The position numbers and the translations under genes were made by a program. From positions 124,001 through 188,000 of IMG/VR virus record IMGVR_UViG_3300044625_001067: a stretch of 64,000 nt of DNA, one strand, 5' to 3'. This document shows positions 9,396 through 25,101 of this stretch, one piece after another (the stretch's first letter is position 1; each line of letters opens with the position of its first letter). The notes beneath the pieces are model-generated. The model saw nothing but the letters and a program-made list of their open reading frames with translations. It was not told the origin of the DNA and did not search any database.

Positions 9396-9439
9396 TTTAG
9401 AGTACCGTGGTTTACGGGGGGTTTGCGCTAGCAAAACAA

Positions 9440-9522
9440 TGGGTGTGGTAAGGATTCGAACCTACGTGTGCATAACAAACCGGGTTACAGCCGGTTCCCT
9501 TCGACCGCTCGGGCACACACCC
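9440..9522 (-). tRNA. trnY: tRNA-Tyr (GTA)
   Basis: GGGTGTG/CACACCC, loop CT-GTA-AC, long variable arm. Confidence 0.93.
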
Positions 9523-9556
9523 TTTTACTTTGAGCTGTGACTCAAAGGTTGTACAA

Positions 9557-9605
9557 GATGATTGTTTTTCTACCAAAAAGAAATTTGTGAATCGCTGAAT
9601 CATCT
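9557..9605 (-). repeat. stem-closed CAGCGA loop element, copy 1
   Basis: AGATGATT...AATCATCT stem; identical to the copy at ~10345-10393. Confidence 0.8.
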
Positions 9606-9627
9606 TAGTTTTGCATTCGCAAAACAG

Positions 9628-9699
9628 TCCGAGAGGGGAATTTCGAAATCCCGACTTCTGGTTCCCAAAACCAGCGCTCTTCCTCTGAGCTACCCCCGG
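9628..9699 (-). tRNA. trnP: tRNA-Pro (TGG)
   Basis: CCGGGGG/CTCTCGG, loop TT-TGG-GA. Confidence 0.9.
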
Positions 9700-9759
9700 T
9701 TAGAGCCGTTTCGTCTTATATAGACCCGGACGGACAGACCGGGTGGGGTATTTCCCGAG

Positions 9760-9832
9760 TGGAACCATGGGGTTACGATCCCCATACCCCCTGCTTGCAA
9801 AACAGGTGCTCTACCAATTGAGCTATGGCCCC
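9760..9832 (-). tRNA. trnA: tRNA-Ala (TGC), atypical T loop ATCGTAA
   Basis: G3:U70, loop TT-TGC-AA. Confidence 0.88.
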
Positions 9833-9878
9833 TTGCGCTAAGCGTGTAACTTAGGTGTTTTACCCTACTAGGGGCAAA

Positions 9879-9950
9879 TTGCTCTACCAGGAGTCGAACC
9901 TGGGTCTCCCCCCTTATAATGGGGGCGTCCTACCGTTAGACTATGGAGCG
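9879..9950 (-). tRNA. atypical tRNA with TAT (Ile) anticodon
   Basis: Cloverleaf with CCCCC-ATTATAA-GGGGG arm; C1:A72 and C6:A67 mismatches; D arm identical to the tRNA-Trp here. Confidence 0.75.
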
Positions 9951-10152
9951 GAGCTCTCTTTATGCTAACGACTGCCAATCGTTTCGCAGAGAGGGTTGTT
10001 TACTTGGCGAGTACTCAACCTGGGACTCTCACCCTTTTGCAAGGTTGTTAGTTTCCCTATGCTAAATCCAACTACTTTCAAGGTCGGTGAACTTAGGCAT
10101 TTTCGTCACTTGCTCGGCGAATCCAACCGCTCAGGGCCCATAGCGGTTGGTA

Positions 10153-10224
10153 TCGGAATGGCCGGGATCGAACCGACGACTTCTCGCCCCCCAGACGAGC
10201 GCTCTCCCTCTGAGCTACATTCCG
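10153..10224 (-). tRNA. trnP: tRNA-Pro (GGG)
   Basis: CGGAATG/CATTCCG, loop CT-GGG-GG. Confidence 0.92.
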
Positions 10225-10242
10225 TTATAGACCGTTTACCCG

Positions 10243-10335
10243 CCACGGTCAAGGGGATTTACTTAACTCTCCAGCTAAAACTGTGAGCAGTGTCGGCACC
10301 ACTTTCTAAGTCAGTTCCGAAGCTTGTAACCGTGG
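10243..10335 (-). ncRNA. candidate multibranch structured RNA
   Basis: CCACGGT/ACCGTGG plus CAAG/CTTG closing helix; inner ACTTA/TAAGT, AGTG/CACT and CTC-CAG/CTG-GAG helices. Confidence 0.45.
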
Positions 10336-10344
10336 GGTTAAACA

Positions 10345-10393
10345 AGATGATTGTTTTTCTACCAAAAAGAAATTTGTGAATCGCTGAATCATC
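10345..10393 (-). repeat. stem-closed CAGCGA loop element, copy 2
   Basis: Identical to copy 1. Confidence 0.8.
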
Positions 10394-10433
10394 TTCGAAA
10401 ATGCTATCGCATTTCTACCCTGTTAAGGGAAGA

Positions 10434-10505
10434 TCGGAAATCTCGGCATCGAACCGAGTACTCACGGGCTTCAACCGTGCGCTTTACCCTTCAAGCTCAT
10501 TTCCG
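10434..10505 (-). tRNA. trnF: tRNA-Phe (GAA), atypical (G8, G37)
   Basis: CGGAAAT/ATTTCCG, loop TT-GAA-GC. Confidence 0.85.
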
Positions 10506-10564
10506 TTGTGTCCCAGGTTTGAACCCCGGAAATTTATCACCTTGGGTGGTACCCCGAAGGCAAA

Positions 10565-10635
10565 CTGGGCGCACGGGACTCGAACCCGCAACCTTCCCCA
10601 TCTCAGAGGACGCTCTGCCATTGAGCTAGCACCCA
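10565..10635 (-). tRNA. tRNA, anticodon undetermined
   Basis: Good acceptor (TGGGTGC/GCGCCCA, G73), D and T arms; anticodon arm TCCTC-TGAGAT-GGGGA has a 6-nt loop. Confidence 0.7.
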
Positions 10636-10737
10636 AAACTCCCTAGCACAGTATCTGCAAATACCATTTTAAGGAGGGTTAAGCAATTGCAGTCGCTTCA
10701 CCTGGGGACTTTCACCCGTTTCCCCGGTGTGGGGTCA

Positions 10738-10808
10738 CGATCCTGAGGGGACTCGAACCCCCCTTCACCGGTAGACAGCCGGTGGCCTTCCCTGACGGCA
10801 ACAGGACC
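10738..10808 (-). tRNA. trnD: tRNA-Asp (GTC)
   Basis: GGTCCTG/CAGGATC, loop CT-GTC-TA, G73. Confidence 0.9.
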
Positions 10809-10859
10809 ATATTCCCGGAGTAAATCCGGGAGGGGCCAGGAAACCACTCCTGGACTTTT

Positions 10860-11050
10860 GCTGGGCTAGAGCACAAACCTCGCCCACAGTGAGTTATCGG
10901 CTCATGTCAGGTATCTCACTAACCTTGCACCCCGCTCTTTTTCGTACACGGGGAGTCCCTTGAGCTGGGCACGCTGTATCTTTCTGGTTAGGGGGCCAAC
11001 AGTGCCCTTGCCCGCTTTACTGTATTCCTGACACCGCAACGTGGCGGTCG
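10860..11050 (-). ncRNA. candidate pseudoknotted structured RNA (~190 nt)
   Basis: TGTCAGG/CCTGACA, GGGCAC/GTGCCC, CCCCG/CGGGG, crossing CTAACC/GGTTAG and AGTGAG/CTCACT, TGGGC/GCCCA; no ORF. Confidence 0.55.
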
Positions 11051-11074
11051 GTTCTTGCTTAAGCGTTGAGGCAA

Positions 11075-11148
11075 CACCCTGGGATGGAGTTGAACCATCG
11101 ATCTTCCGGTTCGTAGCCGGACGCTCTAGTCCACTGAGCTACCAGGGC
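11075..11148 (-). tRNA. trnR: tRNA-Arg (ACG)
   Basis: GCCCTGG/CCAGGGT, loop CT-ACG-AA. Confidence 0.93.
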
Positions 11149-11176
11149 ATTGTTTTAAGTTCCCGTTAAGAGAACA

Positions 11177-11258
11177 TACCGACCGAGAGACTCGAACTCT
11201 CACTCCTTTCGGAACCTGATTTTGAGTCAGGCGCGACTACCAATTCCGCCAGGCCGGC
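11177..11258 (-). tRNA. trnL: tRNA-Leu (CAA)
   Basis: GCCGGCC/GGTCGGT, loop CT-CAA-AA, long variable arm. Confidence 0.95.
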
Positions 11259-11333
11259 AATGTTTAAATTTTCAAGTTGCCCCGGAAAACCGGGTCGGGG
11301 GGTGAGAAACAAAGCTCTCTCAACCACTCCTTT

Positions 11334-11378
11334 AGTATAACCGGTTTCGCCGTGGGGCGAAAGGGCGGTTTACCGTCC
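11334..11378 (-). promoter_or_regulatory. promoter cassette heading a tRNA operon
   Basis: Dyad GGCGGTTTACCGTC, TTTCGC-17-TATACT, followed by conserved leader GGTGGTTG...GGCAACTTGAAAATTT. Confidence 0.85.
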
Positions 11379-11393
11379 CTTTGCTGGGGGTCT

Positions 11394-11564
11394 TCAGGTT
11401 AATACGGTGTCCCACACCACCCCAGTAACTGCATCGACAATGTAAATGTCCTCACCAGTTGAGCGGGAAATGTCGCGAGCTGCGTTTATTGCCTCGCCGT
11501 AGCTTGGGTAGCTTTCACCCCCAACAGAATCCCCGGTCACGGCTTTCTTGAGATAAAAGGTCAT
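11394..11564 (-). CDS. hypothetical protein
   Basis: MTFYLKKAV..., downstream of promoter 11588. Confidence 0.6.
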   Translation of the reverse strand: MTFYLKKAVTGDSVGGESYPSYGEAINAARDISRSTGEDIYIVDAVTGVVWDTVLT

Positions 11565-11587
11565 GAGTTTGTTCCGGCTACAGTGCA

Positions 11588-11636
11588 ATCATAGCGCCTT
11601 TCCACCGAAGAGTAAAGGGCGGGTGACCGAACCGCC
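11588..11636 (-). promoter_or_regulatory. repeated promoter cassette
   Basis: TTTACT-17-TATGAT with an adjacent degenerate dyad. Confidence 0.7.
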
Positions 11637-11715
11637 ACCCGAAATTTCTCTCAAGTAGCGGGGTTACGCACCTACTATAGTGCTACCCTGGCAAAGTAAA
11701 CGTGAAACACGCAGG

Positions 11716-11886
11716 TTAGAGGTAAGCGGAGCCAAGGATCACTTGTTCGCTCAGTTCATTAGTTCTCTTCAAGACTTGAGCAGCTTTTAGGAACTTTAAC
11801 GCCACTATGGGGTTAAGCCCACGAGATTGCTTGTACTTCCCCATTAAAGAAAGGTAAAGTTTTTCCGAGTTAGTTAATGTATTCAT
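11716..11886 (-). CDS. hypothetical protein
   Basis: MNTLTNSEKLYLSL..., ATG at 11886. Confidence 0.6.
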   Translation of the reverse strand: MNTLTNSEKLYLSLMGKYKQSRGLNPIVALKFLKAAQVLKRTNELSEQVILGSAYL

Positions 11887-11905
11887 GAGGGGTTCTTTAG
11901 AAGAC

Positions 11906-13066
11906 TTACACACCCTTGTATAGGAGGCTAACTAGATCTTTAGCGTCCGCTTCCGAAAGTTTGGACCAAGGGCCTTGCTCAAAAGTCTTGAGTGGGGATT
12001 GTGTACCATGCATATATAGGGCAACCACCTCGTCTTCTGACAAACCGAACTTTTCTTTTAGTTGCTTATCAACTTGAAACCTGTTTCTTCTAACAGTTCC
12101 CAGTATAGGAAGGTCTTCTTCCAACTTTTTCACGGAGGGCTTCATACTAGCTTTGTCTACTCTATGCATACCCATGACTTTCCACTCACGGGTTTGCCAA
12201 TTTCCGTAATTACCTAAAATAGCTCCTGTAGCATCCGCAGGAACTAGGGCTTCTGACCCTTTCCCGTGCTCCATGCCGGGGAAGTAGAAGGCACCAAGGG
12301 ACTCGGCCAAGGAAGCTTTAAAGCTTTGTTGGGAAAGCCCGAAGTCCACCCACCTCCCCTTTCCTGTCTTCTCTTCTACAAACAGGTTTCCTGGGTGTGC
12401 GTCGTTGTGAGCTACACCTAGTCGATGGAGGTCTGCCAAAGCTTTCCAATAAATATCGGCTGCAGGTGTGCCGGATACTTTTTGTTCGGGATTAGTAGCG
12501 AGAGACTCTATATCTCGCCCTGGAACTTTAGTCATGGCTATTCTACCGTGCCTCAACCCCAAGTGCTCCATGCCCATTTCGTCTGTTCCTTGAGTCTTCA
12601 ATCTGCCGTTTAAGTCAGCGGCTATTAAGTCCGGGCCGAGATCTTTAGCTCCTACTTTCTTTAAAATACTTGCCTCATTCTCTCCGAGAATTCCTCTCTT
12701 TATATATTGCCCCTTTTCGTTCACGGTTACGAACCCGTAAGCACCGCGTCCGGCCACCTGAGCTACGCTGCCTTTCTTGTCGGACCAGTCTTCAAAATCA
12801 GGGTTACCTGTTCTTTTGAGAATTTTGCTCTCAAGTTTTTTGTCATAACTATGCTCGTTGGACATATCCCAATCTTCTCGTCTTGTTGCGGTATCCTTGA
12901 TTTTATTAGTTTTATCTACGTCTTTCGTTGCATTACCAGAAAGTTTATCCTCAATGGAAATCAAAGACTTTGAAACTTGTGGACTAAGAGTTGCAGAACA
13001 CTTTTTAGAACTTTGAACACAGGATGCCCCACAACTCTTTCCGGCTTTACAATTCTTCTTAGTCAT
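11906..13066 (-). CDS. protein kinase-like protein with N-terminal Cys motif
   Basis: GRGAYG Gly loop, LHRLGVAHNDAHPGN catalytic loop, VDFGL; N-terminal CKAGKSCGASCVQSSKKC. Confidence 0.85.
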   Translation of the reverse strand: MTKKNCKAGKSCGASCVQSSKKCSATLSPQVSKSLISIEDKLSGNATKDVDKTNKIKDTATRREDWDMSNEHSYDKKLESKILKRTGNPDFEDWSDKKGSVAQVAGRGAYGFVTVNEKGQYIKRGILGENEASILKKVGAKDLGPDLIAADLNGRLKTQGTDEMGMEHLGLRHGRIAMTKVPGRDIESLATNPEQKVSGTPAADIYWKALADLHRLGVAHNDAHPGNLFVEEKTGKGRWVDFGLSQQSFKASLAESLGAFYFPGMEHGKGSEALVPADATGAILGNYGNWQTREWKVMGMHRVDKASMKPSVKKLEEDLPILGTVRRNRFQVDKQLKEKFGLSEDEVVALYMHGTQSPLKTFEQGPWSKLSEADAKDLVSLLYKGV

Positions 13067-13121
13067 GTGTGTTTGCGCCGATAGCTTAACTTACCCTTAC
13101 GAGTGATCTTTTAGTTCTGTA

Positions 13122-13192
13122 CACGTGGTAGAGGATTCGAACCCCTACGGGGAGTTTTGGAGACTCCAGTCCTACCGTTAGACGAACCACGT
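13122..13192 (-). tRNA. trnW: tRNA-Trp (CCA)
   Basis: ACGTGGT/ACCACGT, loop CT-CCA-AA. Confidence 0.92.
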
Positions 13193-13216
13193 AGGTTTGA
13201 GTTTCGCGTTAGCGAA

Positions 13217-13298
13217 AGCGGGTAACAGGATTCGAACCTGCGTGAACTATTCGCCTCTTGTTTGGAAAACAAGTGCTCTACCGCTGAGCTATACCCGC
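13217..13298 (-). tRNA. trnG: tRNA-Gly (TCC) with 15-nt variable arm
   Basis: GCGGGTA/TACCCGC, loop TT-TCC-AA, variable region AGGCGAATAGTTCAC. Confidence 0.9.
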
Positions 13299-13329
13299 AT
13301 TTTACTTGAGTTTTTTCGTGAGAGAAAAG

Positions 13330-13402
13330 AGCGGTCGACGTGACTCGAACACGCGACTTTCTACTTGGAAGGAAGACACTCTACCGACTGAGTTACGACC
13401 GC
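13330..13402 (-). tRNA. trnG: tRNA-Gly (TCC)
   Basis: GCGGTCG/CGACCGC, loop CT-TCC-AA. Confidence 0.9.
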
Positions 13403-13438
13403 ATTTTGCTTTAGTGTAATTTTCGCGTAAGCGAAAAG

Positions 13439-13511
13439 GGTGATAGACGGGACTCGAACCCGCTAATTACTGGTTCACAACCAGTTGCCCATCCCTTAGG
13501 CTTCTACCACC
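13439..13511 (-). tRNA. trnH: tRNA-His (GTG)
   Basis: Encoded G-1:C73 pair, loop TT-GTG-AA. Confidence 0.92.
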
Positions 13512-13542
13512 ATTGTAGGGGAGTTTCTGACTAATTTAAGCT

Positions 13543-13589
13543 AGATGATTGTGTTTCCAATAACGAAGGAGTTAATTGCTGAATCATCT
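13543..13589 (-). repeat. stem-closed CAGCAA loop element, copy 3 (diverged interior)
   Basis: Same AGATGATT-CAGC.A...AATCATCT frame with a different inner sequence. Confidence 0.7.
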
Positions 13590-13610
13590 ACTTTTCTGCA
13601 GAGCAGAAAA

Positions 13611-13684
13611 TGGCGGACCGGGGAATTGAACCCCTGTTCCTCTGGGTTATGGGCCCAGCGTGACTACCGTGACACTCGTCCGCG
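13611..13684 (-). tRNA. trnfM: initiator-type tRNA-fMet (CAT), C33
   Basis: Unpaired C1:C72, GGG/CCC anticodon stem, loop CC-CAT-AA. Confidence 0.82.
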
Positions 13685-13735
13685 TTACACCTATACTATA
13701 GCGTTTTTAGCTAGGAGTAAACTTCTCAAGGCAAG

Positions 13736-13806
13736 TTCCTAAGATAGGATTCGAACCTATATAATCTCCTTCAAAGGGAGGTGTCCTTCCGTTAGACGAC
13801 TCAGGA
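13736..13806 (-). tRNA. trnQ: tRNA-Gln (TTG)
   Basis: TCCTGAG/CTTAGGA (U1:A72), loop CT-TTG-AA. Confidence 0.88.
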
Positions 13807-13881
13807 TCGGCTGCCTTAAGTAGGGAGGCTATTATAGCCCCCTAAGATGAAAGTAAACTCTTGGCTAAGGTAGCAAGGAAA

Positions 13882-14000
13882 GGAGCAAGGTTGGACTTGA
13901 ACCAACGGCTTGCTTTGCCCTCCAGCGTTACGGTCCTTTACCGAGGGTCTCTTGCGAGACTCAGAGGAGGTTGCCGCTCTACCAACTGAGCTACTTGCTC
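13882..14000 (-). ncRNA. tRNA-like RNA A (anticodon arm replaced by branched domain)
   Basis: Perfect acceptor GAGCAAG/CTTGCTC, canonical D and T arms, ~65-nt insert with two hairpins. Confidence 0.8.
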
Positions 14001-14050
14001 TTTGCACCCTGAATTAAGTCAAGGAGCTAGAGTTCTCCGTAAAGAGAACA

Positions 14051-14132
14051 TACCCGCCGGGAGACTCGAACTCCCACGCCTTTCGGCACTAGTTCCTAAA
14101 ACTAGCGTATATACCAGTTTCACCAGGCGGGC
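14051..14132 (-). tRNA. trnL: tRNA-Leu (TAG)
   Basis: GCCCGCC/GGCGGGT, loop TT-TAG-GA. Confidence 0.94.
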
Positions 14133-14160
14133 TTGACTGTGATCCCTATGAAAGGGAAAG

Positions 14161-14232
14161 AGCGAACGAAGGGATTTGAACCCTCGACATTCTCGTTGGC
14201 AACGAGGTACTCTACCGCTGAGTTACGTTCGC
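14161..14232 (-). tRNA. trnG: tRNA-Gly (GCC)
   Basis: GCGAACG/CGTTCGC, loop TT-GCC-AA. Confidence 0.95.
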
Positions 14233-14274
14233 ATTGCTCCTTGGAGCAGTTTTCTTCTGCTTTTACAGAAGGTA

Positions 14275-14362
14275 CGGAGAGAACAGGAATCGAACCTGCG
14301 CAGGGGGTCTCCCCCCTGTAACCGTTTTCAAGACGGTCTCCTCGTCCAGCCGGACTCTCTCC
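14275..14362 (-). tRNA. trnS: tRNA-Ser (TGA), atypical D arm
   Basis: GGAGAGA/TCTCTCC, loop CT-TGA-AA, 7-bp variable stem with GAGA loop. Confidence 0.88.
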
Positions 14363-14411
14363 AGTTACCGTAGCACGGTAAGTTTTAGCTAGAAAACCGG
14401 AAGGTTTTCAA

Positions 14412-14570
14412 TGGGAAATGTTGGATTTGAACCAACGCTCTCTCAACTGATCAGGTTGTGAGCGTGCTGTTACAAAGGCGAAGGTCGGGGATCAATCCGC
14501 CATTCGACACTCGTACTGAAGCACTCACCTGGGTAATGTGCCCAGGGCTCTACCGCTGAGCTAATTTCCC
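14412..14570 (-). ncRNA. tRNA-like RNA B (~95-nt variable region)
   Basis: Acceptor GGGAAAT/ATTTCCC, canonical D and T arms, arm CCTGGG-CACATTA-CCCAGG, large structured insert. Confidence 0.8.
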
Positions 14571-14637
14571 GTTAACTCTGTTGACCGGAATTGAATCGGT
14601 CCCTGAACGTGCTGCCGTTTTTCTGCAAAGCAGAAAA

Positions 14638-14709
14638 TGGGGCATCTCGGATTCGAACCGAGGACTGACCGGTTAAAAGCCGGATACTCTACCGCTGAGT
14701 TAATGCCCC
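14638..14709 (-). tRNA. trnK: tRNA-Lys (TTT)
   Basis: GGGGCAT/ATGCCCC, loop CT-TTT-AA. Confidence 0.95.
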
Positions 14710-14792
14710 CCGTATTAAATTTTCAAGTTGCCTTTTGCTTTCGCAAAAGCGGGGAGGAGGTGAAGGCGAAGCCCTCTCTCAACCACCCCTTT

Positions 14793-14836
14793 AGTATAAC
14801 CGGTTTCGCCGAAAGGTGAAAGGGCGGGAAACCGCC
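14793..14836 (-). promoter_or_regulatory. promoter cassette heading a tRNA operon
   Basis: Dyad GGCGGGAAACCGCC, TTTCAC-17-TATACT, conserved leader. Confidence 0.85.
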
Positions 14837-14839
14837 GTA

Positions 14840-15064
14840 TCAAAGGGTGAACTCAAATACAACCTTGCGAACAAAGAAATCGTCAAGGTGCCCGTTGCCG
14901 TACATCCTGACGCAGTCCTGCAGCTTCGCAAGAATCTCGTCGTGGGTGGGAGCGGATGCCCCCTCTTCCAAAAGCTCGGTGAGTTCTCCAGCGATGGAGA
15001 CACAAAGTTCGTGCTCCTTACGAGCACTCAACCCTTTAAGGGTGCCGAAAGTTGCTTGAGCCAT
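14840..15064 (-). CDS. hypothetical protein, paralog of 8298..8537
   Basis: ATG 15064 (MAQATFGTLKGLSARKEHELCVSI). Confidence 0.8.
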   Translation of the reverse strand: MAQATFGTLKGLSARKEHELCVSIAGELTELLEEGASAPTHDEILAKLQDCVRMYGNGHLDDFFVRKVVFEFTL

Positions 15065-15095
15065 TTTGACTTGGAGGACCAACGGTAACAATTTA

Positions 15096-15161
15096 AGTTT
15101 AGCTGGTTTCACCGTGAAGCGAAAGGGTGGGAAACCGCCCCGGTTCGTTCGGTTAACTGAG
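15096..15161 (-). promoter_or_regulatory. repeated promoter cassette
   Basis: TTTCGC-17-TAAACT with dyads upstream. Confidence 0.7.
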
Positions 15162-15176
15162 CGAGTCACGGAGCAA

Positions 15177-15247
15177 AGCCCTGCCAGGGAATCGAACCCT
15201 GCTCTGCAGTTTACAAAACTGCTGCATCACCACAATGCTTGAAGGGC
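15177..15247 (-). tRNA. trnT: tRNA-Thr (TGT)
   Basis: Loop TT-TGT-AA; one acceptor mismatch. Confidence 0.85.
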
Positions 15248-15277
15248 ATTTTCCTTGTAGTTCTTCGGGGAGAACAA

Positions 15278-15366
15278 CGGAAGATGTGAGATTCGAACTC
15301 ACGGAGCTGCTTGCGCAGCTCAACGGTTTAGCAAACCGTCGCCTTCAACCACTCGGCCAATCTTCC
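15278..15366 (-). tRNA. trnS: tRNA-Ser (GCT)
   Basis: GGAAGAT/ATCTTCC, loop TT-GCT-AA, long variable arm. Confidence 0.94.
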
Positions 15367-15386
15367 AAAATTTCTCGTTAGAGAAA

Positions 15387-15459
15387 TTGCCCCAACCGGA
15401 TTCGAACCGGTATTTCCACCTTGAGAGGGTAGCGACCTAAGCCATTAGTCGATGAGGCC
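15387..15459 (-). tRNA. trnE: tRNA-Glu (CTC)
   Basis: Loop CT-CTC-AA, G1:A72 mismatch. Confidence 0.88.
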
Positions 15460-15496
15460 GTTTTCTGCGAAAAACAGAGAGTTTGCTTAAGCAAAG

Positions 15497-15569
15497 TAGG
15501 AATGACAGGATTCGAACCTGTGTATCTCGGTAATCGGCCGAAGGTATTAGGCCACTATACGACATTCTC
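15497..15569 (-). tRNA. trnI: atypical tRNA-Ile (GAT), C33/U37
   Basis: Loop CC-GAT-TA, weak acceptor end. Confidence 0.7.
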
Positions 15570-15630
15570 AGAAAACGAGCAGTTACGTATGATGCTCAGC
15601 ACAGGTTCCCCAGCAAAAGGGCTGAGAGGA

Positions 15631-15702
15631 TGGGAGCACTCGGGAACGACCCGAGGGCCTTTTCCGTGTCAAAGAAACGCTCTACCACTGAGCTATGCTC
15701 CC
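15631..15702 (-). tRNA. trnV: tRNA-Val (GAC), atypical T loop GTCGTTC
   Basis: GGGAGCA/TGCTCCC, loop TT-GAC-AC. Confidence 0.87.
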
Positions 15703-15813
15703 AACCGGAGCAGTCACGCTCCGTACCTAGTTTCCTATAATTGCCTACTCGTGTCATCGCGGAAGTTGACGAAACTTCTAGAACTTTCGGCTCAAGTGGT
15801 GTTAGGCACCTGA

Positions 15814-15968
15814 TTAAAGTGGAGAGACTCGAACTCCCATAGCAGGATTACGTCTAGCTGTCACCTGCACGGTGGTTGCAACCATGAGCTAGGAGGTTGC
15901 TATTTGTTCACAACCCCATCCGTATTGGCTGAATCCACACCGCCGTATACCAATTCCGGCACACTTTG
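15814..15968 (-). ncRNA. tRNA-like RNA C (Leu-type body, expanded anticodon and variable arms)
   Basis: AAAGTG/CACTTT acceptor, Leu-type D arm CCG-GAATTGGTATA-CGG, T arm GGGAG-TTCGAGT-CTCTC, ~65-nt insert closed by GGTG/CACC, GCAGG/CCTGC variable stem. Confidence 0.78.
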
Positions 15969-16027
15969 TTCTTAGCGTTTGAGGAGAACCTGAAGTAGGT
16001 CCCTCTTCTTTCTCTCTGTAAGAGAAA

Positions 16028-16100
16028 CTGGAGTGGGAGGGTTCGAACCTCCAACGAAGCGGTTAACAGCCGCACGATCTGCCAATTGATCTACACCCCA
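16028..16100 (-). tRNA. trnN: tRNA-Asn (GTT)
   Basis: TGGGGTG/CACTCCA, loop CT-GTT-AA. Confidence 0.92.
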
Positions 16101-16252
16101 TTGAGCCCTGCATTACGGCAGAGGGTACTAAGAAGCACTCCGGGGTCGCGAGCGTCCCCATACGAGTAGGAATCGTTACTGAAACCGGTTATTACTGTCC
16201 CTTAAGTTGCAAACCGACAACCTCGCTTAAGGAATTTTCGCGAGTGCGAAAA

Positions 16253-16325
16253 TGGAGACAATCGGAATTGAACCGATCACAAGTCGCTTGCGAAGCGTCC
16301 TCGCCACCCTGGAACATGTGCCCCC
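16253..16325 (-). tRNA. trnA: tRNA-Ala (CGC), atypical D arm
   Basis: G3:U70, loop TT-CGC-AA. Confidence 0.8.
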
Positions 16326-16431
16326 GTTTTCCTATCGGAAAACAAAAGTTAGCCGATAGGGGACAGAGCGTCTCACCTCTGCGAGGAACGTTTCAGTTCG
16401 TTTTCCCCTTAGGGAAGTTGCCCGAAGGCAA

Positions 16432-16504
16432 TGGGTTTGGTGGGATTCGAACCCACAACATACCGGGTAAGAGCCGGTTACTCTGCCAATTGAGCTACAA
16501 ACCC
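16432..16504 (-). tRNA. trnK: tRNA-Lys (CTT)
   Basis: GGGTTTG/CAAACCC, loop CT-CTT-AC. Confidence 0.94.
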
Positions 16505-16567
16505 GAACCCCAAGTTTAGAAAGCACCATCGCAGGTACTTGGGCAACCTTTTTCGCTAACGCGAAAA

Positions 16568-16640
16568 TGGGAACGGCCTGATTTGAACAGGCGGCCTATC
16601 GGTTATCAACCGATTGCTCTTACCGCTGAGCTACGCTCCC
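16568..16640 (-). tRNA. trnI: tRNA-Ile (GAT)
   Basis: GGGAGCG/CGTTCCC, loop TT-GAT-AA. Confidence 0.93.
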
Positions 16641-16715
16641 TTGGTACTAAATTGTCAAGTTGCCCCCCGGAAACCGGGTCAGTAAGGAAAGCGGAAGCTT
16701 TCCAACCACCCCTTT

Positions 16716-16759
16716 AGTATAACCGGTTTTGCCGTAGGGCGAAAGGGCGGTTTACCGCC
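16716..16759 (-). promoter_or_regulatory. promoter cassette heading a tRNA operon
   Basis: Dyad GGCGGTTTACCGCC, TTTCGC-17-TATACT, conserved leader. Confidence 0.85.
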
Positions 16760-16817
16760 CCCTTCACCCCTGGTCAACATTGAAGTATTCACTCAGGAAT
16801 GCTTGCGTAAGCAAACA

Positions 16818-16892
16818 TGGCGAGAGGCAGGATTTGAACCTGCGATCTCCAGCTTATGAGACTGGCGAGATACCGGGCTTCTCCACTCCGCT
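16818..16892 (-). tRNA. trnM: tRNA-Met (CAT)
   Basis: Loop CT-CAT-AA; acceptor needs a 1-nt bulge. Confidence 0.82.
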
Positions 16893-16948
16893 ATAAAGAC
16901 CTAGTATTTCAGTTCGGTTTTCGTTTTACGAAAAATGCCCAAGGGCAA

Positions 16949-17056
16949 TGGGTATGGACAGGATTCGAACCTGCAATGCCAGAGGCGACTGCTGTACTTA
17001 CAGCCCACTATTCCCAAGAACCGTGTACACAATTCCTGCTTCAGTGAGACATACCC
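16949..17056 (-). ncRNA. tRNA-like RNA D (Tyr-derived, expanded D arm, 4-nt anticodon loop)
   Basis: GGGTATG/CATACCC acceptor, T arm GCAGG-TTCGAAT-CCTGT, long hairpin in the D position, GCTGT-AAGT-ACAGC arm, GCC-TCT-GGC variable arm. Confidence 0.72.
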
Positions 17057-17079
17057 GTGAAGTTTCCGATAGGAAACAA

Positions 17080-17162
17080 TGGGAGCGGTAGGATTCGAAC
17101 CTACGAAGCATTGAGCAACCGGGTTACAGCCGGTCTCCTTTGACCACTCGGAGAACACTCCC
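17080..17162 (-). tRNA. trnY: tRNA-Tyr (GTA)
   Basis: GGGAGTG/CGCTCCC, loop CT-GTA-AC. Confidence 0.93.
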
Positions 17163-17169
17163 ATTTTGC

Positions 17170-17358
17170 TCTGCAGACACTGCTTTGGGTTGAGCCACCC
17201 CCTACTTTGTATCTCTAAAGTAGTAAAATAGGTTCTTCTAATTGCGGTTTTAACCGCATAACGAGAGAAGTTTTTGGATTTCGAAGAAACCTTTGCACCC
17301 CTTAAACTACCCAAGCATGGAGCTCAGGGGCTGAGTCGAACAGCCATTTCTCTCTTTT
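17170..17358 (-). ncRNA. possible circularly permuted tRNA-like/tmRNA-like element
   Basis: Orphan T arm GGCTG-TTCGACT-CAGCC followed by ...GAGCTCCA; downstream GGGGTGCAAAGGTTTC and several hairpins. Confidence 0.35.
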
Positions 17359-17377
17359 ATTTTCGCGTGAGCGAAAA

Positions 17378-17458: not shown

Positions 17459-17533
17459 ATGGTGTTAAATTGTCAAGTTGCCTCCCGCAAGAGCGGAAGC
17501 GAGGCGGAAGCCGAGCTTCCCAACCACCCCTTT

Positions 17534-17576
17534 ACTATAGCGTTTTTCACCGGGCAAGTAAAGCGGGGAAACCGCC
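17534..17576 (-). promoter_or_regulatory. promoter cassette heading a tRNA operon
   Basis: TTTACT-17-TATAGT, dyad, conserved leader. Confidence 0.85.
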
Positions 17577-17616
17577 CTCTTGAACCCCCAGTCGCAAGCT
17601 AGCTTAGCGCACCCTC

Positions 17617-18065: not shown

Positions 18066-18109
18066 ACTATAGCGGTTTTCACAGGGGAAGTAAAGCCGGG
18101 AAACCGCCC
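18066..18109 (-). promoter_or_regulatory. repeated promoter cassette
   Basis: TTTACT-17-TATAGT, dyad GCCGGGAAACCGCC. Confidence 0.85.
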
Positions 18110-18116
18110 TGCTAGC

Positions 18117-21738: not shown

Positions 21739-23226
21739 ATGACATTTGTGACAGAAAACTTAACGAAGAGTTCTAAAGCTGCTTCGAACGGAAATGGAAA
21801 ATGCAACGATAACTGTTCTGTGAGTGAAGCCGTTGTCTGTGATTTACGCTCTCGCCCGGAACCTCGTCGAATTGACCTCGACAAACTATACGAGTGCGAC
21901 CCGAAAGACTATATTGGCTATTTTGCCGACGAAACCTCTTACGACAACCTTATTCAAGAAGACTGCGACGTTTATGTGGGCGGAGTGAAAGTTGTTGCCT
22001 TTCGTAAGGCACTTTTTCCGAAGCTGCGCGATGGTTCGAAAGGTAGCCCGGAAACTTGGAAATACTTCCGCTGGGCAGCAAGAGACTTGTACTCAGACCA
22101 ACGAGGCCTAGTTGCTGGTAGAGAACTAACTACCCAACTCGAGATAAGGGTAACCAACGGTATTCTAAACTTCTTCAAGAAGGCGATGGCCGGTCAAGTC
22201 ACTGACGTGGAAGAGGCACTGAAAATTGCTTCTCTCTCCCCCGACATGTCAAAGCTCACTGTCCGAGTGAATGATGTTAAAAAGGACTTCCCAGAAATTG
22301 AGAAAGCTTTAGAATCTATCGAGAAGGAACTTCGCAAGAAAACGCTGAGCGAAGAAAGAAAGGTAGAGCTGAAGGAAGCGAAGGGTAGAGAACTTGCGAA
22401 GTGGTTCCCGACTTGGCTGTCTGAGACTTGGAGTGCATCTACGGATAAGGTTTCTGAGGCGAAACGTGCCGACGACAGGTATGTGGGAAAACAATACCGT
22501 TCAAACAAGTGCTATTCCAACGTGATTGGTGCTTTTGATAGGGGTGCACGTAACCCTTACGGTCGTTTGACCGCAACAACTGTAAAAGACTATGAGGGGT
22601 TCGTAAGCCACACGGATATTTATCAGACCGCGTGCTCTGCGCTCAAAGAGACCTTGAACACTCCGGAAAACCCTCGGTGGGACCTCCTTCACGAACGGTT
22701 CAGTAACGTGAAAGACCCGCACTATAACCTCTTCGGTACGGTGTTCACTGCCCTTACGTTAAACTGGAACTTCCGCTGTGCGATGCACTATGATGGAAAT
22801 AACTGCGAAGGTGGTATTGCCGTTCTTACTGCAATTACTCAGGGCGAATATGACGGTCACTACCTTGTGTTCCCTGAAATTCGTTGCGCTTTTGACCTTC
22901 GCGACGGAGATTTCATTGCAGGCGACAACCAGGGCTTGATTCACGGCAACACCGCGATGATCCCTAAAACTCCGGACGCTGAACGAGTTTCGTTCGTTTT
23001 CTATTCACGAGAGCGCATGACCGCTCTTGACGATATGGAGTGTGAGGAGTGCCGCCGAGATTTCATGCGATACGCAGCAGACAACCACAAGGAATACGGA
23101 AAGGGTCACAAGACATGGAATGGTGTCTGGAGCGGAATGTGGAAATCACCGGAATGGATGACGTATAAAGCCGAACACGGCATGGAACGTTGCTCAAATA
23201 CTAACTATTGGGGCACCGATAATTGA
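21739..23226 (+). CDS. 2OG-Fe(II) dioxygenase, TET/JBP family (copy 1)
   Basis: FTALTLNWNFRCAMHYD (HxD), IHGNT (distal His), ERVSFVFYSRE (2OG Arg), YLVFPE; matches the JBP/TET pattern. Confidence 0.85.
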   Translation: MTFVTENLTKSSKAASNGNGKCNDNCSVSEAVVCDLRSRPEPRRIDLDKLYECDPKDYIGYFADETSYDNLIQEDCDVYVGGVKVVAFRKALFPKLRDGSKGSPETWKYFRWAARDLYSDQRGLVAGRELTTQLEIRVTNGILNFFKKAMAGQVTDVEEALKIASLSPDMSKLTVRVNDVKKDFPEIEKALESIEKELRKKTLSEERKVELKEAKGRELAKWFPTWLSETWSASTDKVSEAKRADDRYVGKQYRSNKCYSNVIGAFDRGARNPYGRLTATTVKDYEGFVSHTDIYQTACSALKETLNTPENPRWDLLHERFSNVKDPHYNLFGTVFTALTLNWNFRCAMHYDGNNCEGGIAVLTAITQGEYDGHYLVFPEIRCAFDLRDGDFIAGDNQGLIHGNTAMIPKTPDAERVSFVFYSRERMTALDDMECEECRRDFMRYAADNHKEYGKGHKTWNGVWSGMWKSPEWMTYKAEHGMERCSNTNYWGTDN

Positions 23227-23281: not shown

Positions 23282-23617
23282 ATGGACACAAACAAACAGC
23301 TTAACGGTGGCGATGCGGAGCGGCAAGTTGCCTCGGGGAGTATTGAACCCAGTGAAGCAACAACCGCCATTACAGTGGAACTCCCGGTAAACTTCGCTGA
23401 GGCTTTTCGAGCACTTGCTGAACGAGAGGAGTTGTCGGAGAGTAACCTTATTGTACGATCGCTCGGGCTCTACTCCGTTGCATCTCAAGCCGAGAGTGAA
23501 GGGTACGGACTGACGTTTACTCGTATTGAGGGAACCAACGACCTGACCGCCAAGGAAGCAATTCGCGTCGAAGATGAGCCCGCGTCTAACTTGATCCTTC
23601 CTGGAAATAGGCAATGA
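23282..23617 (+). CDS. ribbon-helix-helix-like protein
   Basis: ITVELPVNFAEAFRALAERE..SESNLIVRSLGLY; similar to the C-terminus of 1535..2704. Confidence 0.6.
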   Translation: MDTNKQLNGGDAERQVASGSIEPSEATTAITVELPVNFAEAFRALAEREELSESNLIVRSLGLYSVASQAESEGYGLTFTRIEGTNDLTAKEAIRVEDEPASNLILPGNRQ

Positions 23618-25101
23618 TCCGAGAGGTAATATCAAAAGAGTTACAGTCAAGGGTCGAACCCTTACAGATTGATAGGGGTGCTCTTGAAAACTGCCCTCGC
23701 AGTGAATATATTGGACAATTCCCTAAGGCGACAGACTATGACCGCGTAATCGATGAAGACTGTGATGTTTACGTCTCAGGTGTAAAAGTCTTGTCCTTCA
23801 GGAAAGCTCTTTTCCCACTTCTTTCCGAGGGTTCTTCCAAACAGAAGGAGACTTGGGACTTTTTCCGAGCAGCTTCAAAAGAAGTTTACGGCACCCAAAG
23901 AGGTGTCGTTGCGGGCACAGAGTTTACAACTCGCCCCGAATCACGCTTAACCAAAGGACAGGTTGCCTTTTTCGCTAGTGCTTCAGTGGGCTTGATCACA
24001 ACGCTCGCTCAAGCGCGAGAAACCCTAGAAAGTTCGGATGAGCTCACCAGCAAGACTCTGAAAATCAAATACGTGAAGAAAGACTACCCCGAACTTGCGG
24101 AGAAAATGAAACCGTTAGAGGCGGAAATTCGCACACTGAACTCCGGAGACCCGAAACCAGAAAGTCTGAGAAACCAGAGAAGAGAACAGCTTTGGGGTTG
24201 GTTCGAACCTTGGTTACTAGAAGTTTGGCTGCCCTCAGAAAACAAAGTAGAAGAAGTTAAAAAAGTTCTAAACACTTACATAAGTTCCCAGTTGAACTTT
24301 AACCACTGCTACAGTAACGTCCTTGGGGCGATTGACCGTGGGGCTAGATTTCCCTACGGTCGTTTAAGCGGAACCACTCAGAGATACTATGAGCAGTTCT
24401 CAAAATACAGAGACATTTATTACACAGCCTGCGAAGGTTTCAGGTACAATTTTCCGGAGACTTGGGTCAAAGTCAAGGAAGTGATTTCGAGGGCTAAAGA
24501 CCCTAACTACAACTTGTTCGGCACTGCCTTTACGAGTGTAACCGTAAATTTCAATTTCAAGACTGCCTACCACGTTGACAAGAACAATTTGAAAGGGGGT
24601 ATGTCCGTCTTAACTGCTTTTACAAAAGGTGTTTATGAAGGTCACTACTTAGTGTTTCCCGAAGTGAGATTGGCCTTCAATTTAAGAGACGGGGACTTCA
24701 TCGTAGGGGATACTCAAACTTTGCTCCATGGTAACAGCCCCATGACAAAACTTACTGAAGATGCTGAGCGGGTTTCTCTGGTTTTCTACTCACGAGAGAA
24801 CATGAACCGATTGGACGATCTTGAGTGCGAAGAATGCCGAAAACAGTTCATGAAGTTTTCACTTCAGTCTCTGAAAGAACGGGGCAAAGATCATAAAGAT
24901 TGGAGAGGTGTTTGGCAAGGTATGTGGACTTCTCAAGAATGGCTAGACTTTAGAAAAGAAAGAAACTTGGAACACTGTTCAAACTCTAATTGGCAGCTTT
25001 CCTCGCCGTACGAGAACGAAGTTACGAAAGAGGTGAAGTTGTTCAAGGATGATCCAGGCGAAGGGTGGAAACTCGTACAAGTGTTTACACAAGATCGGTA
25101 A
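23614..25101 (+). CDS. 2OG-Fe(II) dioxygenase, TET/JBP family (copy 2)
   Basis: [33 protein letters not shown]; collinear with copy 1 along its length. Confidence 0.85.

What the first reader, a model, noticed from the sequence alone, without database searches (positions are those of the whole stretch)
10860..11050. ~190-nt pseudoknotted ncRNA candidate between tRNA-Arg and tRNA-Asp
This ORF-free stretch has at least six helices on the transcribed strand: TGTCAGG/CCTGACA closing; GGGCAC-TGT/ACA-GC-GTGCCC; CCCCG/CGGGG; loop CTAACC pairing with downstream GGTTAG; AGTGAG/CTCACT crossing the closing helix; and TGGGC/GCCCA. It is flanked by the short spacer hairpins that separate tRNAs here, so it may be cut out as its own RNA. 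It lacks the RNase P, SRP and group I signature motifs that I know. It could be a ribozyme or a new phage RNA class.
Basis: partly seen in the sequence, partly recalled or inferred. Interest (0 to 1): 0.62.

Follow-up and report, generated by a model that had tools for sequence, protein, structure and literature searches.

The report
Orphan small RNA in phage tRNA array
A roughly 180-base non-coding stretch between two tRNA genes of a freshwater giant phage does seem to build up as its own RNA in one lake sample, but its proposed pseudoknotted fold is no better than chance and nothing related exists elsewhere, so it is a modest candidate rather than a new ribozyme.

Summary
The window is part of a 277-kb freshwater jumbo myovirus. 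Its DNA polymerase is 57% identical to that of Synechococcus phage S-CBWM1. It carries 34 tRNA genes on the minus strand. Their number and strength match dinucleotide shuffles: 12 helices of 5 bp or more against 10.0±2.9, and RNAfold z between 0 and -1 on both strands. No Rfam family matches, even at E≤10.

Related phages have a conserved, non-homologous 64-65-nt spacer between tRNA-Arg(ACG) and tRNA-Asp. The 264-nt spacer here is therefore a lineage-specific replacement. Only three haplotypes at least 95% identical exist, so covariation cannot be tested: 34 of 36 proposed pairs never vary.

One positive result stands. In one lake metatranscriptome, a 181-nt contig covers exactly 10860-11040 at depth 42, while flanking phage contigs sit at 2-3.5.

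Best reading: a non-coding, recently acquired spacer segment that is co-transcribed with the tRNAs and accumulates as a stable processing product. The closest analogues are T4 RNAC and RNAD, without homology. The ribozyme and new-class readings are unsupported. Interest is modest.

The parts
11074..11149 (-). tRNA-Arg(ACG), the upstream neighbour in the transcription direction
   Evidence: ARAGORN; Rfam tRNA 65.6 bits. Haplotype B carries a different allele here, 29% diverged, while the spacer is kept.
11033..11048 (-). 5' spacer hairpin ACCGC-CACGUU-GCGGU
   Evidence: Present in the MFE folds. Haplotype B changes C11046>U and C11036>U both give G.U pairs. Haplotype C changes the loop at 11042/11041.
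10860..11040 (-). Core element, equal to the extent of the 181-nt metatranscriptome contig. The strand is inferred from the tRNA genes, not shown.
   Evidence: X20 record 18: length 181, maps 1-181 to 10860-11040, 0 mismatches, depth 42.3 against 2-3.5 for the flanks. No Rfam match. No homologue in relatives.
10905..11033 (-). Domain closed by helix H1: UGUCAGG 11033-11027 with CCUGACA 10911-10905. In the 181-nt RNA it can be extended by GUUGCGG 11040-11034 pairing with CCG-AUAAC 10900-10893.
   Evidence: All pairs are invariant in the 3 haplotypes except C11036>U, which gives U.G. z for this domain is -1.05.
10967..11007 (-). Helix H2: GGGCAC(+UGU) with (ACA+)GUGCCC and a 20-nt loop. A flanking helix GGGC 11013-11010 / GCUC 10965-10962 appears in the MFE.
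   Evidence: In haplotype B, C10964>U and C10962>U keep G.U pairs.
10930..10953 (-). Helix H3: CCCCG/CGGGG hairpin
   Evidence: In haplotype B, U10954>A creates an A-U pair with U10929 and joins C10955-G10928, giving 7 contiguous pairs (inspection).
10919..10991 (-). Proposed pseudoknot PK1: loop CUAACC 10991-10986 with GGUUAG 10924-10919
   Evidence: The words are present. There is one one-sided change, A10989>G, which gives G.U. A 6-bp helix is within chance expectation.
10888..10920 (-). Proposed pseudoknot PK2: AGUGAG 10920-10915 with CUCACU 10893-10888, crossing H1. It overlaps PK1 by 2 nt and the extended closing helix by 1 nt.
   Evidence: The pairs are invariant. Haplotype C has an ACU insertion directly 3' of it.
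10862..10886 (-). 3' hairpin H4: UGGGC/GCCCA
   Evidence: The terminal pair U10886-A10862 is broken in haplotypes B and C by A10862>C.
10813..10853 (-). Two 3' spacer hairpins, CCAGGA/UCCUGG at 10853-10836 and UCCCGGA/UCCGGGA at 10831-10813. They lie outside the RNA contig.
   Evidence: They are identical in haplotypes A and B. X20 has no cover at this depth here.
10737..10809 (-). tRNA-Asp(GUC), the downstream neighbour
   Evidence: ARAGORN; Rfam 37.5 bits. It is identical in haplotypes A and B.
11321..11382 (-). Copy of the 62-nt repeat module D1 upstream of tRNA-Leu(CAA). It is a candidate promoter or leader of the transcription unit Leu-Arg-element-Asp-Leu-Phe.
   Evidence: Five copies, each at the head of a tRNA sub-cluster. 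The role is inferred.

Best explanation
The 264-nt spacer between tRNA-Arg(ACG) and tRNA-Asp(GUC) is a lineage-specific, non-coding replacement of the short conserved spacer found in related phages. It is transcribed on the minus strand as part of a polycistronic tRNA precursor, probably starting near the repeat module at 11321-11382. When the host's tRNA-processing nucleases release tRNA-Arg and tRNA-Asp, a core of about 180 nt (10860 to 11040, possibly up to 11073) survives as a discrete, fairly abundant RNA. Moderately stable terminal helices would protect it: a closing stem at the 5' end and a GGGC/GCCC hairpin at the 3' end.

In kind it resembles the small stable RNAs RNAC and RNAD of the T4 tRNA cluster, whose function is also unknown.

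What is shown: the position, the lack of coding capacity, the absence from relatives, and the enrichment in one RNA run.

What is inferred: the strand, the co-transcription, which nucleases cut, and which helices form.

I think it most likely has no essential or catalytic role. It is probably a tolerated or mildly useful by-product of the tRNA operon.
For: - Context: 34 tRNAs, all on the minus strand, with repeat module D1 heading the sub-clusters.
- Non-coding: only a 45-aa TTG ORF, 1-nt indels in haplotype C, no such gene on record, and no gene called there in JGI records.
- Lineage-specific: relatives at 87% and 68% polymerase identity, and locus L044, have Arg(acg) and Asp(gtc) 64-65 nt apart with a conserved, unrelated spacer. 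nhmmer and covariance-model searches of their arrays and whole records find nothing. Most other long spacers of the array are conserved in those relatives.
- RNA accumulation: in X20, a 181-nt contig at depth 42.3 sits among phage contigs at depth 2-3.5. In DNA run X15 the same region is one continuous 5,987-nt contig at uniform depth 10.3, so extra DNA copies do not explain the excess.
- Precedent: T4 rnaD (119 nt) and rnaC (139 nt) lie directly behind tRNA-Arg in the T4 tRNA cluster. They are described as small RNAs of unknown role in PMC3014915 and PMC9697503.
- Control for the z-score: T4 rnaD itself has z = -0.83, so a null z-score does not exclude a stable RNA.
Against: - Only one of three RNA runs shows the element-specific excess. 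X21 has no cover of the element although its flanks are covered at about 3x. X19 is covered at 80-105x along the whole sub-cluster.
- All runs were contigs, which cannot show ends, strand or level.
- The contig's 5' end at 11040 abuts the polymorphic 11041/11042, so it may be a graph branch with clipped tips rather than an RNA end.
- The fold is no more stable than shuffles.
- Haplotype B is no better than random mutants at keeping the MFE.
- The element diverges 5.0% between haplotypes, against 2.6-3.0% for other long spacers.
Confidence: 0.5

Rival explanations
1. One reading: a functional, pseudoknotted structured RNA. It would be either a self-cleaving ribozyme that helps cut the tRNA precursor or the first member of a new phage RNA class.
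For: - All proposed helices exist.
- Natural variants break only 1 of the 36 proposed pairs. A10989>G keeps PK1 as G.U and U10954>A lengthens H3.
- Large structured RNAs of unknown function do sit near phage tRNA islands (PMC12286853), and HDV-like theta ribozymes sit beside phage tRNAs (PMC10879173).
Against: - Helix count and energy are at chance level.
- There is no compensatory change, and 34 of 36 pairs never vary.
- No Rfam ribozyme or ncRNA family matches at E<=10.
- The element starts 27-33 nt from tRNA-Arg, not within 5 nt as theta ribozymes do. The order of the helices is not that of the HDV fold (inspection).
- It is absent from all relatives, which process the same tRNA pair with a 65-nt spacer.
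- It is not more conserved than neutral-looking spacers.
- PK1, PK2 and the extended closing stem compete for the same bases.
Confidence: 0.1
2. Plain neutral spacer DNA with no RNA of its own. The 181-nt contig would be an accident of assembly (graph branches at strain polymorphisms, tip clipping) and of uneven cover in one low-depth metatranscriptome.
For: - The 5' end of the contig is exactly adjacent to the variable 11041/11042.
- X21 shows no cover of the element. In X21 another piece of the array, 9880-10152, is the one enriched, at 11.8 against 3, which suggests haphazard survival of fragments.
- There is no thermodynamic or evolutionary signal.
Against: - A 12- to 20-fold depth excess over all neighbouring phage contigs in the same run cannot come from graph topology.
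- The DNA run shows single-copy, uniform depth across the element and its flanks.
- The contig runs through several internal polymorphic sites without breaking.
Confidence: 0.25
3. A decayed gene remnant: a pseudo-tRNA or pair of pseudo-tRNAs, a small protein gene, or a fragment captured from the host or another mobile element.
For: tRNA arrays in this phage group gain and lose cassettes. Examples are the kinase-like ORF at 11906-13066, which is absent from haplotype B, the swapped tRNA-Arg allele, and the 146-nt indel at 9891-10036. The spacer was replaced wholesale rather than extended.
Against: - Rfam tRNA gives no match at E<=10 in the spacer. ARAGORN at very relaxed thresholds gives only implausible calls.
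- There is no similarity to the rest of the phage genome beyond chance.
- A 20-mer scan of 185,579 species genomes gave only three chance hits. IMG/VR gave none.
- The ORF is broken by indels in haplotype C.
Confidence: 0.1

Closest known systems
T4 RNAC (species 1, 139 nt) and RNAD (species 2, 119 nt), small stable RNAs of the T4 tRNA cluster
   Same: Both are non-coding RNAs of 100-200 nt that lie between or behind tRNA genes on the same strand. In T4 they sit directly behind tRNA-Arg. They are thought to be cut out of the tRNA precursor, they accumulate, and their function is unknown (PMC3014915, PMC9697503). RNAD, like this element, has an unremarkable folding z-score of -0.83.
   Different: There is no sequence or structure similarity; covariance model R1 gives only noise on the T4 region. 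RNAC has a tRNA-like T-arm and paired ends and z = -4.6; this element has no T-loop. The T4 RNAs abut the tRNA within 1-6 nt. This element is set off by 27-33 nt and 50 nt of hairpin-bearing spacer.
HDV-like theta ribozymes beside phage tRNAs (PMC10879173)
   Same: A phage tRNA context, and a proposed nested or crossing helix arrangement.
   Different: Theta ribozymes are minimal, with the cleavage site within about 5 nt of the tRNA. Here there is no HDV-like Rfam match at E<=10 and the distance from the tRNA is 27 nt or more. The helix order differs too: the 5' strand of the crossing helix lies directly before the 3' strand of the closing helix, with no P3 between them, which is not the HDV topology.
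GOLLD and ROOL large RNAs near phage tRNA islands (PMC12286853)
   Same: Phage-encoded non-coding RNAs of unknown function found next to tRNA arrays. GOLLD was first seen in lake metagenomes.
   Different: Those RNAs are large (many GOLLD members exceed 800 nt), widely conserved and rich in covariation. This element is 181 nt and an orphan, and it does not match their Rfam models.
The conserved 64-65-nt Arg-Asp spacer of related phages
   Same: It occupies the same position between the same two tRNA genes and shares the first six bases after the tRNA (TGCCTC).
   Different: Otherwise it is non-homologous; local alignment is no better than shuffles. It is about 200 nt shorter and is conserved across phages whose polymerases are only 68-87% identical to this one, whereas the element occurs only in this species-level lineage.

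Membership tests
Any Rfam 15 family (including HDV-like, hammerhead, twister, pistol, hatchet, GOLLD, ROOL, 6S, SRP, RNase P, tmRNA, Y RNA/YrlA) | Covariance-model match at the gathering score, or at least at E<=10 | tested here: not met
   the only matches in 10700-11200 are the two flanking tRNAs and noise that overlaps them. Nothing lies inside 10810-11073.
HDV-like theta ribozyme | Cleavage site within about 5 nt of a tRNA end | tested here: not met
   The element begins 27-33 nt behind tRNA-Arg and ends 50 nt before tRNA-Asp. The criterion is from PMC10879173.
HDV-like theta ribozyme | Nested double pseudoknot in the order P1-P2-P3-P1'-P4-P2' | tested here: not met
   By inspection of the helices located, the order of strands does not fit. 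No dedicated theta descriptor was on hand.
HDV-like theta ribozyme / any self-cleaving ribozyme | Self-cleavage of the transcript | not testable with these tools
   This needs in vitro transcription and a cleavage assay.
Small stable RNAs of phage tRNA clusters (T4 RNAC/RNAD kind) | Non-coding, inside a tRNA gene cluster, on the same strand as the tRNAs | tested here: met
   The strand of the RNA itself is inferred.
Small stable RNAs of phage tRNA clusters (T4 RNAC/RNAD kind) | Accumulates as a discrete RNA species | tested here: inconclusive
   A 181-nt contig at depth 42.3 against 2-3.5 in X20, but no such excess in X21 or X19. The data are contigs only.
Small stable RNAs of phage tRNA clusters (T4 RNAC/RNAD kind) | Homology to T4 rnaC or rnaD | tested here: not met
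   Covariance model R1 on the T4 tRNA region with filters off: best 5.1 bits, E 0.66, and not at rnaC or rnaD.
tRNA / pseudo-tRNA / tRNA-like RNA | Acceptor stem plus T-arm with a T-loop, or a tRNA covariance-model match | tested here: not met
   Rfam tRNA at E<=10 gives none. ARAGORN at default gives none, and at -ps80 only implausible folds.
Bacterial Y RNA (YrlA) with Ro60/Rsr | A Y RNA model match and a TROVE-domain partner encoded nearby | tested here: not met
   No Rfam match. No TROVE (PF05731) or RtcB (PF01139) in the 277-kb genome, and the control genomes did ring.
Small protein gene | An open frame kept intact among variants | tested here: not met
   The 45-aa TTG ORF at 10902-11039 carries a 1-nt deletion in the C-run and another at 109xx in haplotype C. 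No gene with this product is on record.
Conserved structured ncRNA (general) | Covariation in homologues, or folding energy below shuffles | tested here: inconclusive
The natural variant against random mutants gives p = 0.07-0.76 depending on the structure tested.

The most novel reading that the evidence does not exclude
A recently acquired, lineage-specific structured RNA of a freshwater jumbo cyanophage that is excised from the tRNA precursor and accumulates during infection. It would have a real pseudoknotted fold and a function of its own, for example assisting precursor processing or acting as a decoy for a host RNA-targeting defence. It would be the founding member of a family that current databases are too thin to reveal.
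Probability: 0.1. Interest if true: 0.6.

Novelty: new member of a known kind. Interest (0 to 1): 0.3.

Why it matters
Phage tRNA arrays are known to carry non-tRNA RNAs whose roles remain unsolved decades after their discovery (T4 RNAC/RNAD, GOLLD, ROOL). If this is a real stable RNA, it shows that such passengers can arise very recently. Here one would have replaced a conserved 65-nt spacer within a single species-level lineage of an abundant lake phage, and it would be visible in environmental RNA. That gives a natural presence/absence comparison between close relatives for asking what such RNAs do. As it stands, the evidence for a specific fold or activity is at chance level, so the practical value is as a candidate for a northern blot or raw-read check, not as a discovery.

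Tried and rejected
- Rfam at the gathering score over the whole window, and at E<=10 over 10700-11200: nothing in the spacer.
- GenBank phages by blastn with 11-base words: no match.
- IMG/VR exact scans with a 22-mer and a 20-mer of the element: 0 hits. A scan for the tRNA-Arg/spacer junction gave only G002 and one chance hit in a coding region.
- GTDB genomes with the 20-mer: three chance hits with no extended similarity.
- The search for related loci with the kinase-like ORF at 11906-13066: no relatives.
- Search of whole related records by DNA and by covariance model R1, and of S-CBWM1: only tRNAs or nothing.
- Looked for more haplotypes through the neighbouring 187/192-aa ORF in JGI, ENA and Logan contigs: 12 further contigs, all identical to haplotype A or B.
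- Antisense or sense matches of the element to the rest of the phage genome: none above the shuffled level.
- Small-ORF reading: rejected.
- Pseudo-tRNA or tmRNA: rejected.
- Y RNA: rejected.
- A sigma-70-like promoter or intrinsic terminator bounding the element on the minus strand: none. The only terminator-like site, 10836-10853, is on the plus strand, and sites in the region are fewer than in shuffles.
- One paper search failed on a two-letter term.
- No alternative genetic code was used.

Full report
**Setting.** The window is bases 124001-188000 of a 277,244-bp IMG/VR virus record judged 98% complete. It encodes a tail sheath, a portal, topoisomerase II and a gamma-like DNA polymerase. 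The polymerase's nearest cultured relative is Synechococcus phage S-CBWM1 at 57% identity, and the other hits are all cyanophages. Sequencing runs that hold the stretch are lake-water and freshwater metagenomes. The phage is therefore a freshwater jumbo myovirus, probably of a cyanobacterium; the host is an inference. ARAGORN finds 34 tRNA genes, all on the minus strand, between 660 and 17459. Rfam agrees and adds one weak tRNA. The finding is the 264-nt spacer between tRNA-Arg(ACG) at 11074-11149 and tRNA-Asp(GUC) at 10737-10809.

**The observation.** The flanking short hairpins are there too. The only ORF is a 45-codon TTG frame.

These helices are what a sequence of this length and composition gives by chance:
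- The 172-nt core holds 12 perfect helices of 5 bp or more, against 10.0±2.9 in 1000 dinucleotide shuffles.
- It holds 4 helices of 6 bp or more, against 2.5, and 1 of 7 bp or more, against 0.6.
- A greedy, crossing-allowed set of helices scores 92 against 68±16, which 6% of shuffles reach.
- Nested folding energy is unremarkable for every cut tried and on both strands, with z from -1.05 to 0.00.

As a control on how much that means, I folded the two bona fide small stable RNAs of the T4 tRNA cluster. RNAC has z = -4.6 but RNAD only -0.8. A null z-score therefore weakens the case but does not kill it.

**Known families.** Rfam 15 gives nothing inside the spacer at the gathering score or at E<=10. 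ARAGORN finds no tRNA or tmRNA, and at very relaxed settings only implausible folds. The phage has no Ro60/TROVE or RtcB gene that would suggest a Y RNA. The element starts 27-33 nt from tRNA-Arg, whereas theta ribozymes cleave within about 5 nt of their tRNA (PMC10879173). The strand order of the proposed helices is not that of the HDV fold. GOLLD and ROOL also sit near phage tRNA islands (PMC12286853), but they are far larger and their models do not match.

**Relatives.** The DNA polymerase retrieved 26 related IMG/VR loci at 68-100% identity. Three relatives cover the array: G002 (87%), L044 and the complete G003 (68%). In all three, tRNA-Arg(ACG) and tRNA-Asp(GUC) are neighbours separated by only 64-65 nt. 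That short spacer is almost identical among them, which is better conserved than the tRNAs beside it. Beyond its first six bases it shows no similarity to the spacer here. The 264-nt spacer is therefore a lineage-specific replacement.

DNA, nhmmer and covariance-model searches find no copy in:
- the relatives' arrays and whole records;
- S-CBWM1 and GenBank phages;
- IMG/VR;
- 185,579 species genomes.

By contrast, most other spacers of 100 nt or more in this array have clear homologues in the relatives, with E from 1e-5 to 1e-38.

**Variation within the lineage.** The metagenome scan and look-ups through the neighbouring 187/192-aa ORF gave 14 further contigs that hold the spacer. They fall into just three haplotypes. 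Haplotypes A (the window) and B differ at 9 of 181 positions, or 5.0%. The neighbouring tRNAs differ by 0% and the other long spacers by 2.6-3.0%. Haplotype C adds two 1-nt deletions and a 3-nt insertion, which rules out the small ORF.

One changes on one side (A-U to G.U in the CUAACC/GGUUAG pseudoknot), one terminal pair is broken, and none is compensatory. RNAalifold likewise finds 0 compensatory pairs.

I compared haplotype B with 1000 random mutants carrying the same number of transitions and transversions:
- B keeps the MFE no better than the mutants do (54% do as well).
- B keeps A's MFE structure worse than most of them.

This is compatible with a weak structural constraint but is not evidence for one.

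**RNA evidence.** Six metatranscriptome runs hold 30-44% of the sampled words of 10560-11260. I laid three of them and one DNA run on 9400-12400.
- In X20, one contig of 181 nt maps from end to end on 10860-11040 with no mismatch, at depth 42.3. Every other contig of the phage in that run has depth 2-3.5.
- In DNA run X15, the same region is one continuous 5,987-nt contig at depth 10.3. Extra DNA copies therefore do not explain the excess.
- X21 covers the flanks at about 3x but not the element.
- X19, a run holding variant strains, is covered at 80-105x along the whole sub-cluster.

There are caveats. Contigs show neither ends nor strand. The end at 11040 is immediately next to the polymorphic 11041/11042. 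If two haplotypes coexist and the RNA ends within a few tens of bases upstream, tip clipping would put the contig end exactly there. The true 5' end may then lie anywhere up to the tRNA-Arg 3' end at 11073. With the RNA starting at 11040, GUUGCGG can pair with CCG-AUAAC (10900-10893) and extend the closing helix to 14 pairs.

**Mechanism.**
- Shown: a non-coding, orphan insert in a tRNA operon, enriched as RNA in one natural sample.
- Inferred: transcription on the minus strand from a unit headed by the 62-nt repeat module at 11321-11382, which recurs at the head of five tRNA sub-clusters.
- Inferred: release by the nucleases that mature tRNA-Arg and tRNA-Asp, a further cut in the A-rich single strand at about 10856-10860, and protection of the core by its terminal helices.

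The closest analogues are T4 RNAC and RNAD. They lie directly behind T4 tRNA-Arg and their roles are still unknown (PMC3014915, PMC9697503). There is no homology to them. I therefore file the element as a new, unrelated member of that kind, at about 50% confidence. The main rival, at about 25%, is a meaningless spacer with an assembly accident.

**Verdict.** Interest is 0.3.

Noticed in passing
window 15814-15968 (-), inside spacer 15704-16027; homologues at L037:838-1042, L044:5570-5750, L028:2672-2857(-), L046:5072-5230: A conserved tRNA-like RNA of about 155 nt. It has an acceptor stem AAAGUG/CACUUU, which is GAAGUG/CACUUC in relatives (a compensatory change). It also has a D-arm-like stem, a classical T-arm GAGAG-UUCGAGU-CUCUC, an inserted domain of about 72 nt, and a hairpin with 4 compensatory pairs. 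ARAGORN at default settings and Rfam tRNA at E<=1 miss it. Relaxed ARAGORN calls a dubious 'tRNA-Cys(aca) with 72-nt intron'. This is a better-supported structured RNA than the finding itself.
   Followed up: partly
window 9523-17376, spacers of the tRNA array: Most spacers of 100 nt or more are conserved in the arrays of related phages, with nhmmer E from 1e-5 to 1e-38. The best examples are 15704-16027, 16101-16431, 10225-10433 and 13807-14050. They may hold further non-tRNA RNAs or decayed tRNAs. Rfam sees weak tRNAs at 16253-16323 (26.6 bits) and 13611-13684 (31.2 bits).
   Followed up: partly
window 11321-11382, 14780-14841, 15083-15144, 16703-16764, 17521-17582 (and 18066-18110): A 62-nt repeat module read on the minus strand: two short hairpins followed by GGTTATACTAAAGGAG. 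One copy stands at the head of each tRNA sub-cluster. It is a candidate phage promoter or leader that divides the array into transcription units.
   Followed up: no
L029:1577-1641, L044:8315-8379, L047:8565-8628: The 64-65-nt spacer between tRNA-Arg(ACG) and tRNA-Asp in related phages is nearly identical across phages whose polymerases are only 68-87% identical to this one. That is better conserved than the flanking tRNAs. It contains a GUUC-UUCG-GAAC hairpin and may be a processing signal.
   Followed up: no
window 11906-13066 (-); 9891-10036; 11074-11149: There is cassette-like strain variation inside the array. The 386-aa ORF with weak protein-kinase/ABC1 similarity is absent from haplotype B, where tRNA-Trp and tRNA-Leu(CAA) are 135 nt apart. 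The variant strain also lacks 146 nt at 9891-10036, losing tRNA-Ile(UAU), and carries a 29%-diverged tRNA-Arg allele of the G002 type.
   Followed up: partly
window 9547-9606 and 10336-10395: A 60-nt direct repeat, 97% identical, in two different spacers. It has an internal inverted repeat, AAGATGATT...AATCATCTT, and is also conserved in relatives.
   Followed up: no
window 9880-10152: In RNA run X21, a 273-nt contig covering tRNA-Ile(UAU) plus the 202-nt spacer behind it has depth 11.8, against about 3 for other phage contigs. This may be another accumulating fragment of the array.
   Followed up: no
window 21739-23226 and 23614-25101 (+): Two paralogous 495-aa ORFs of PHROG 24024, function unknown. 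The second has a weak match to queuine tRNA-ribosyltransferase, which could relate to tRNA modification next to the array.
   Followed up: no
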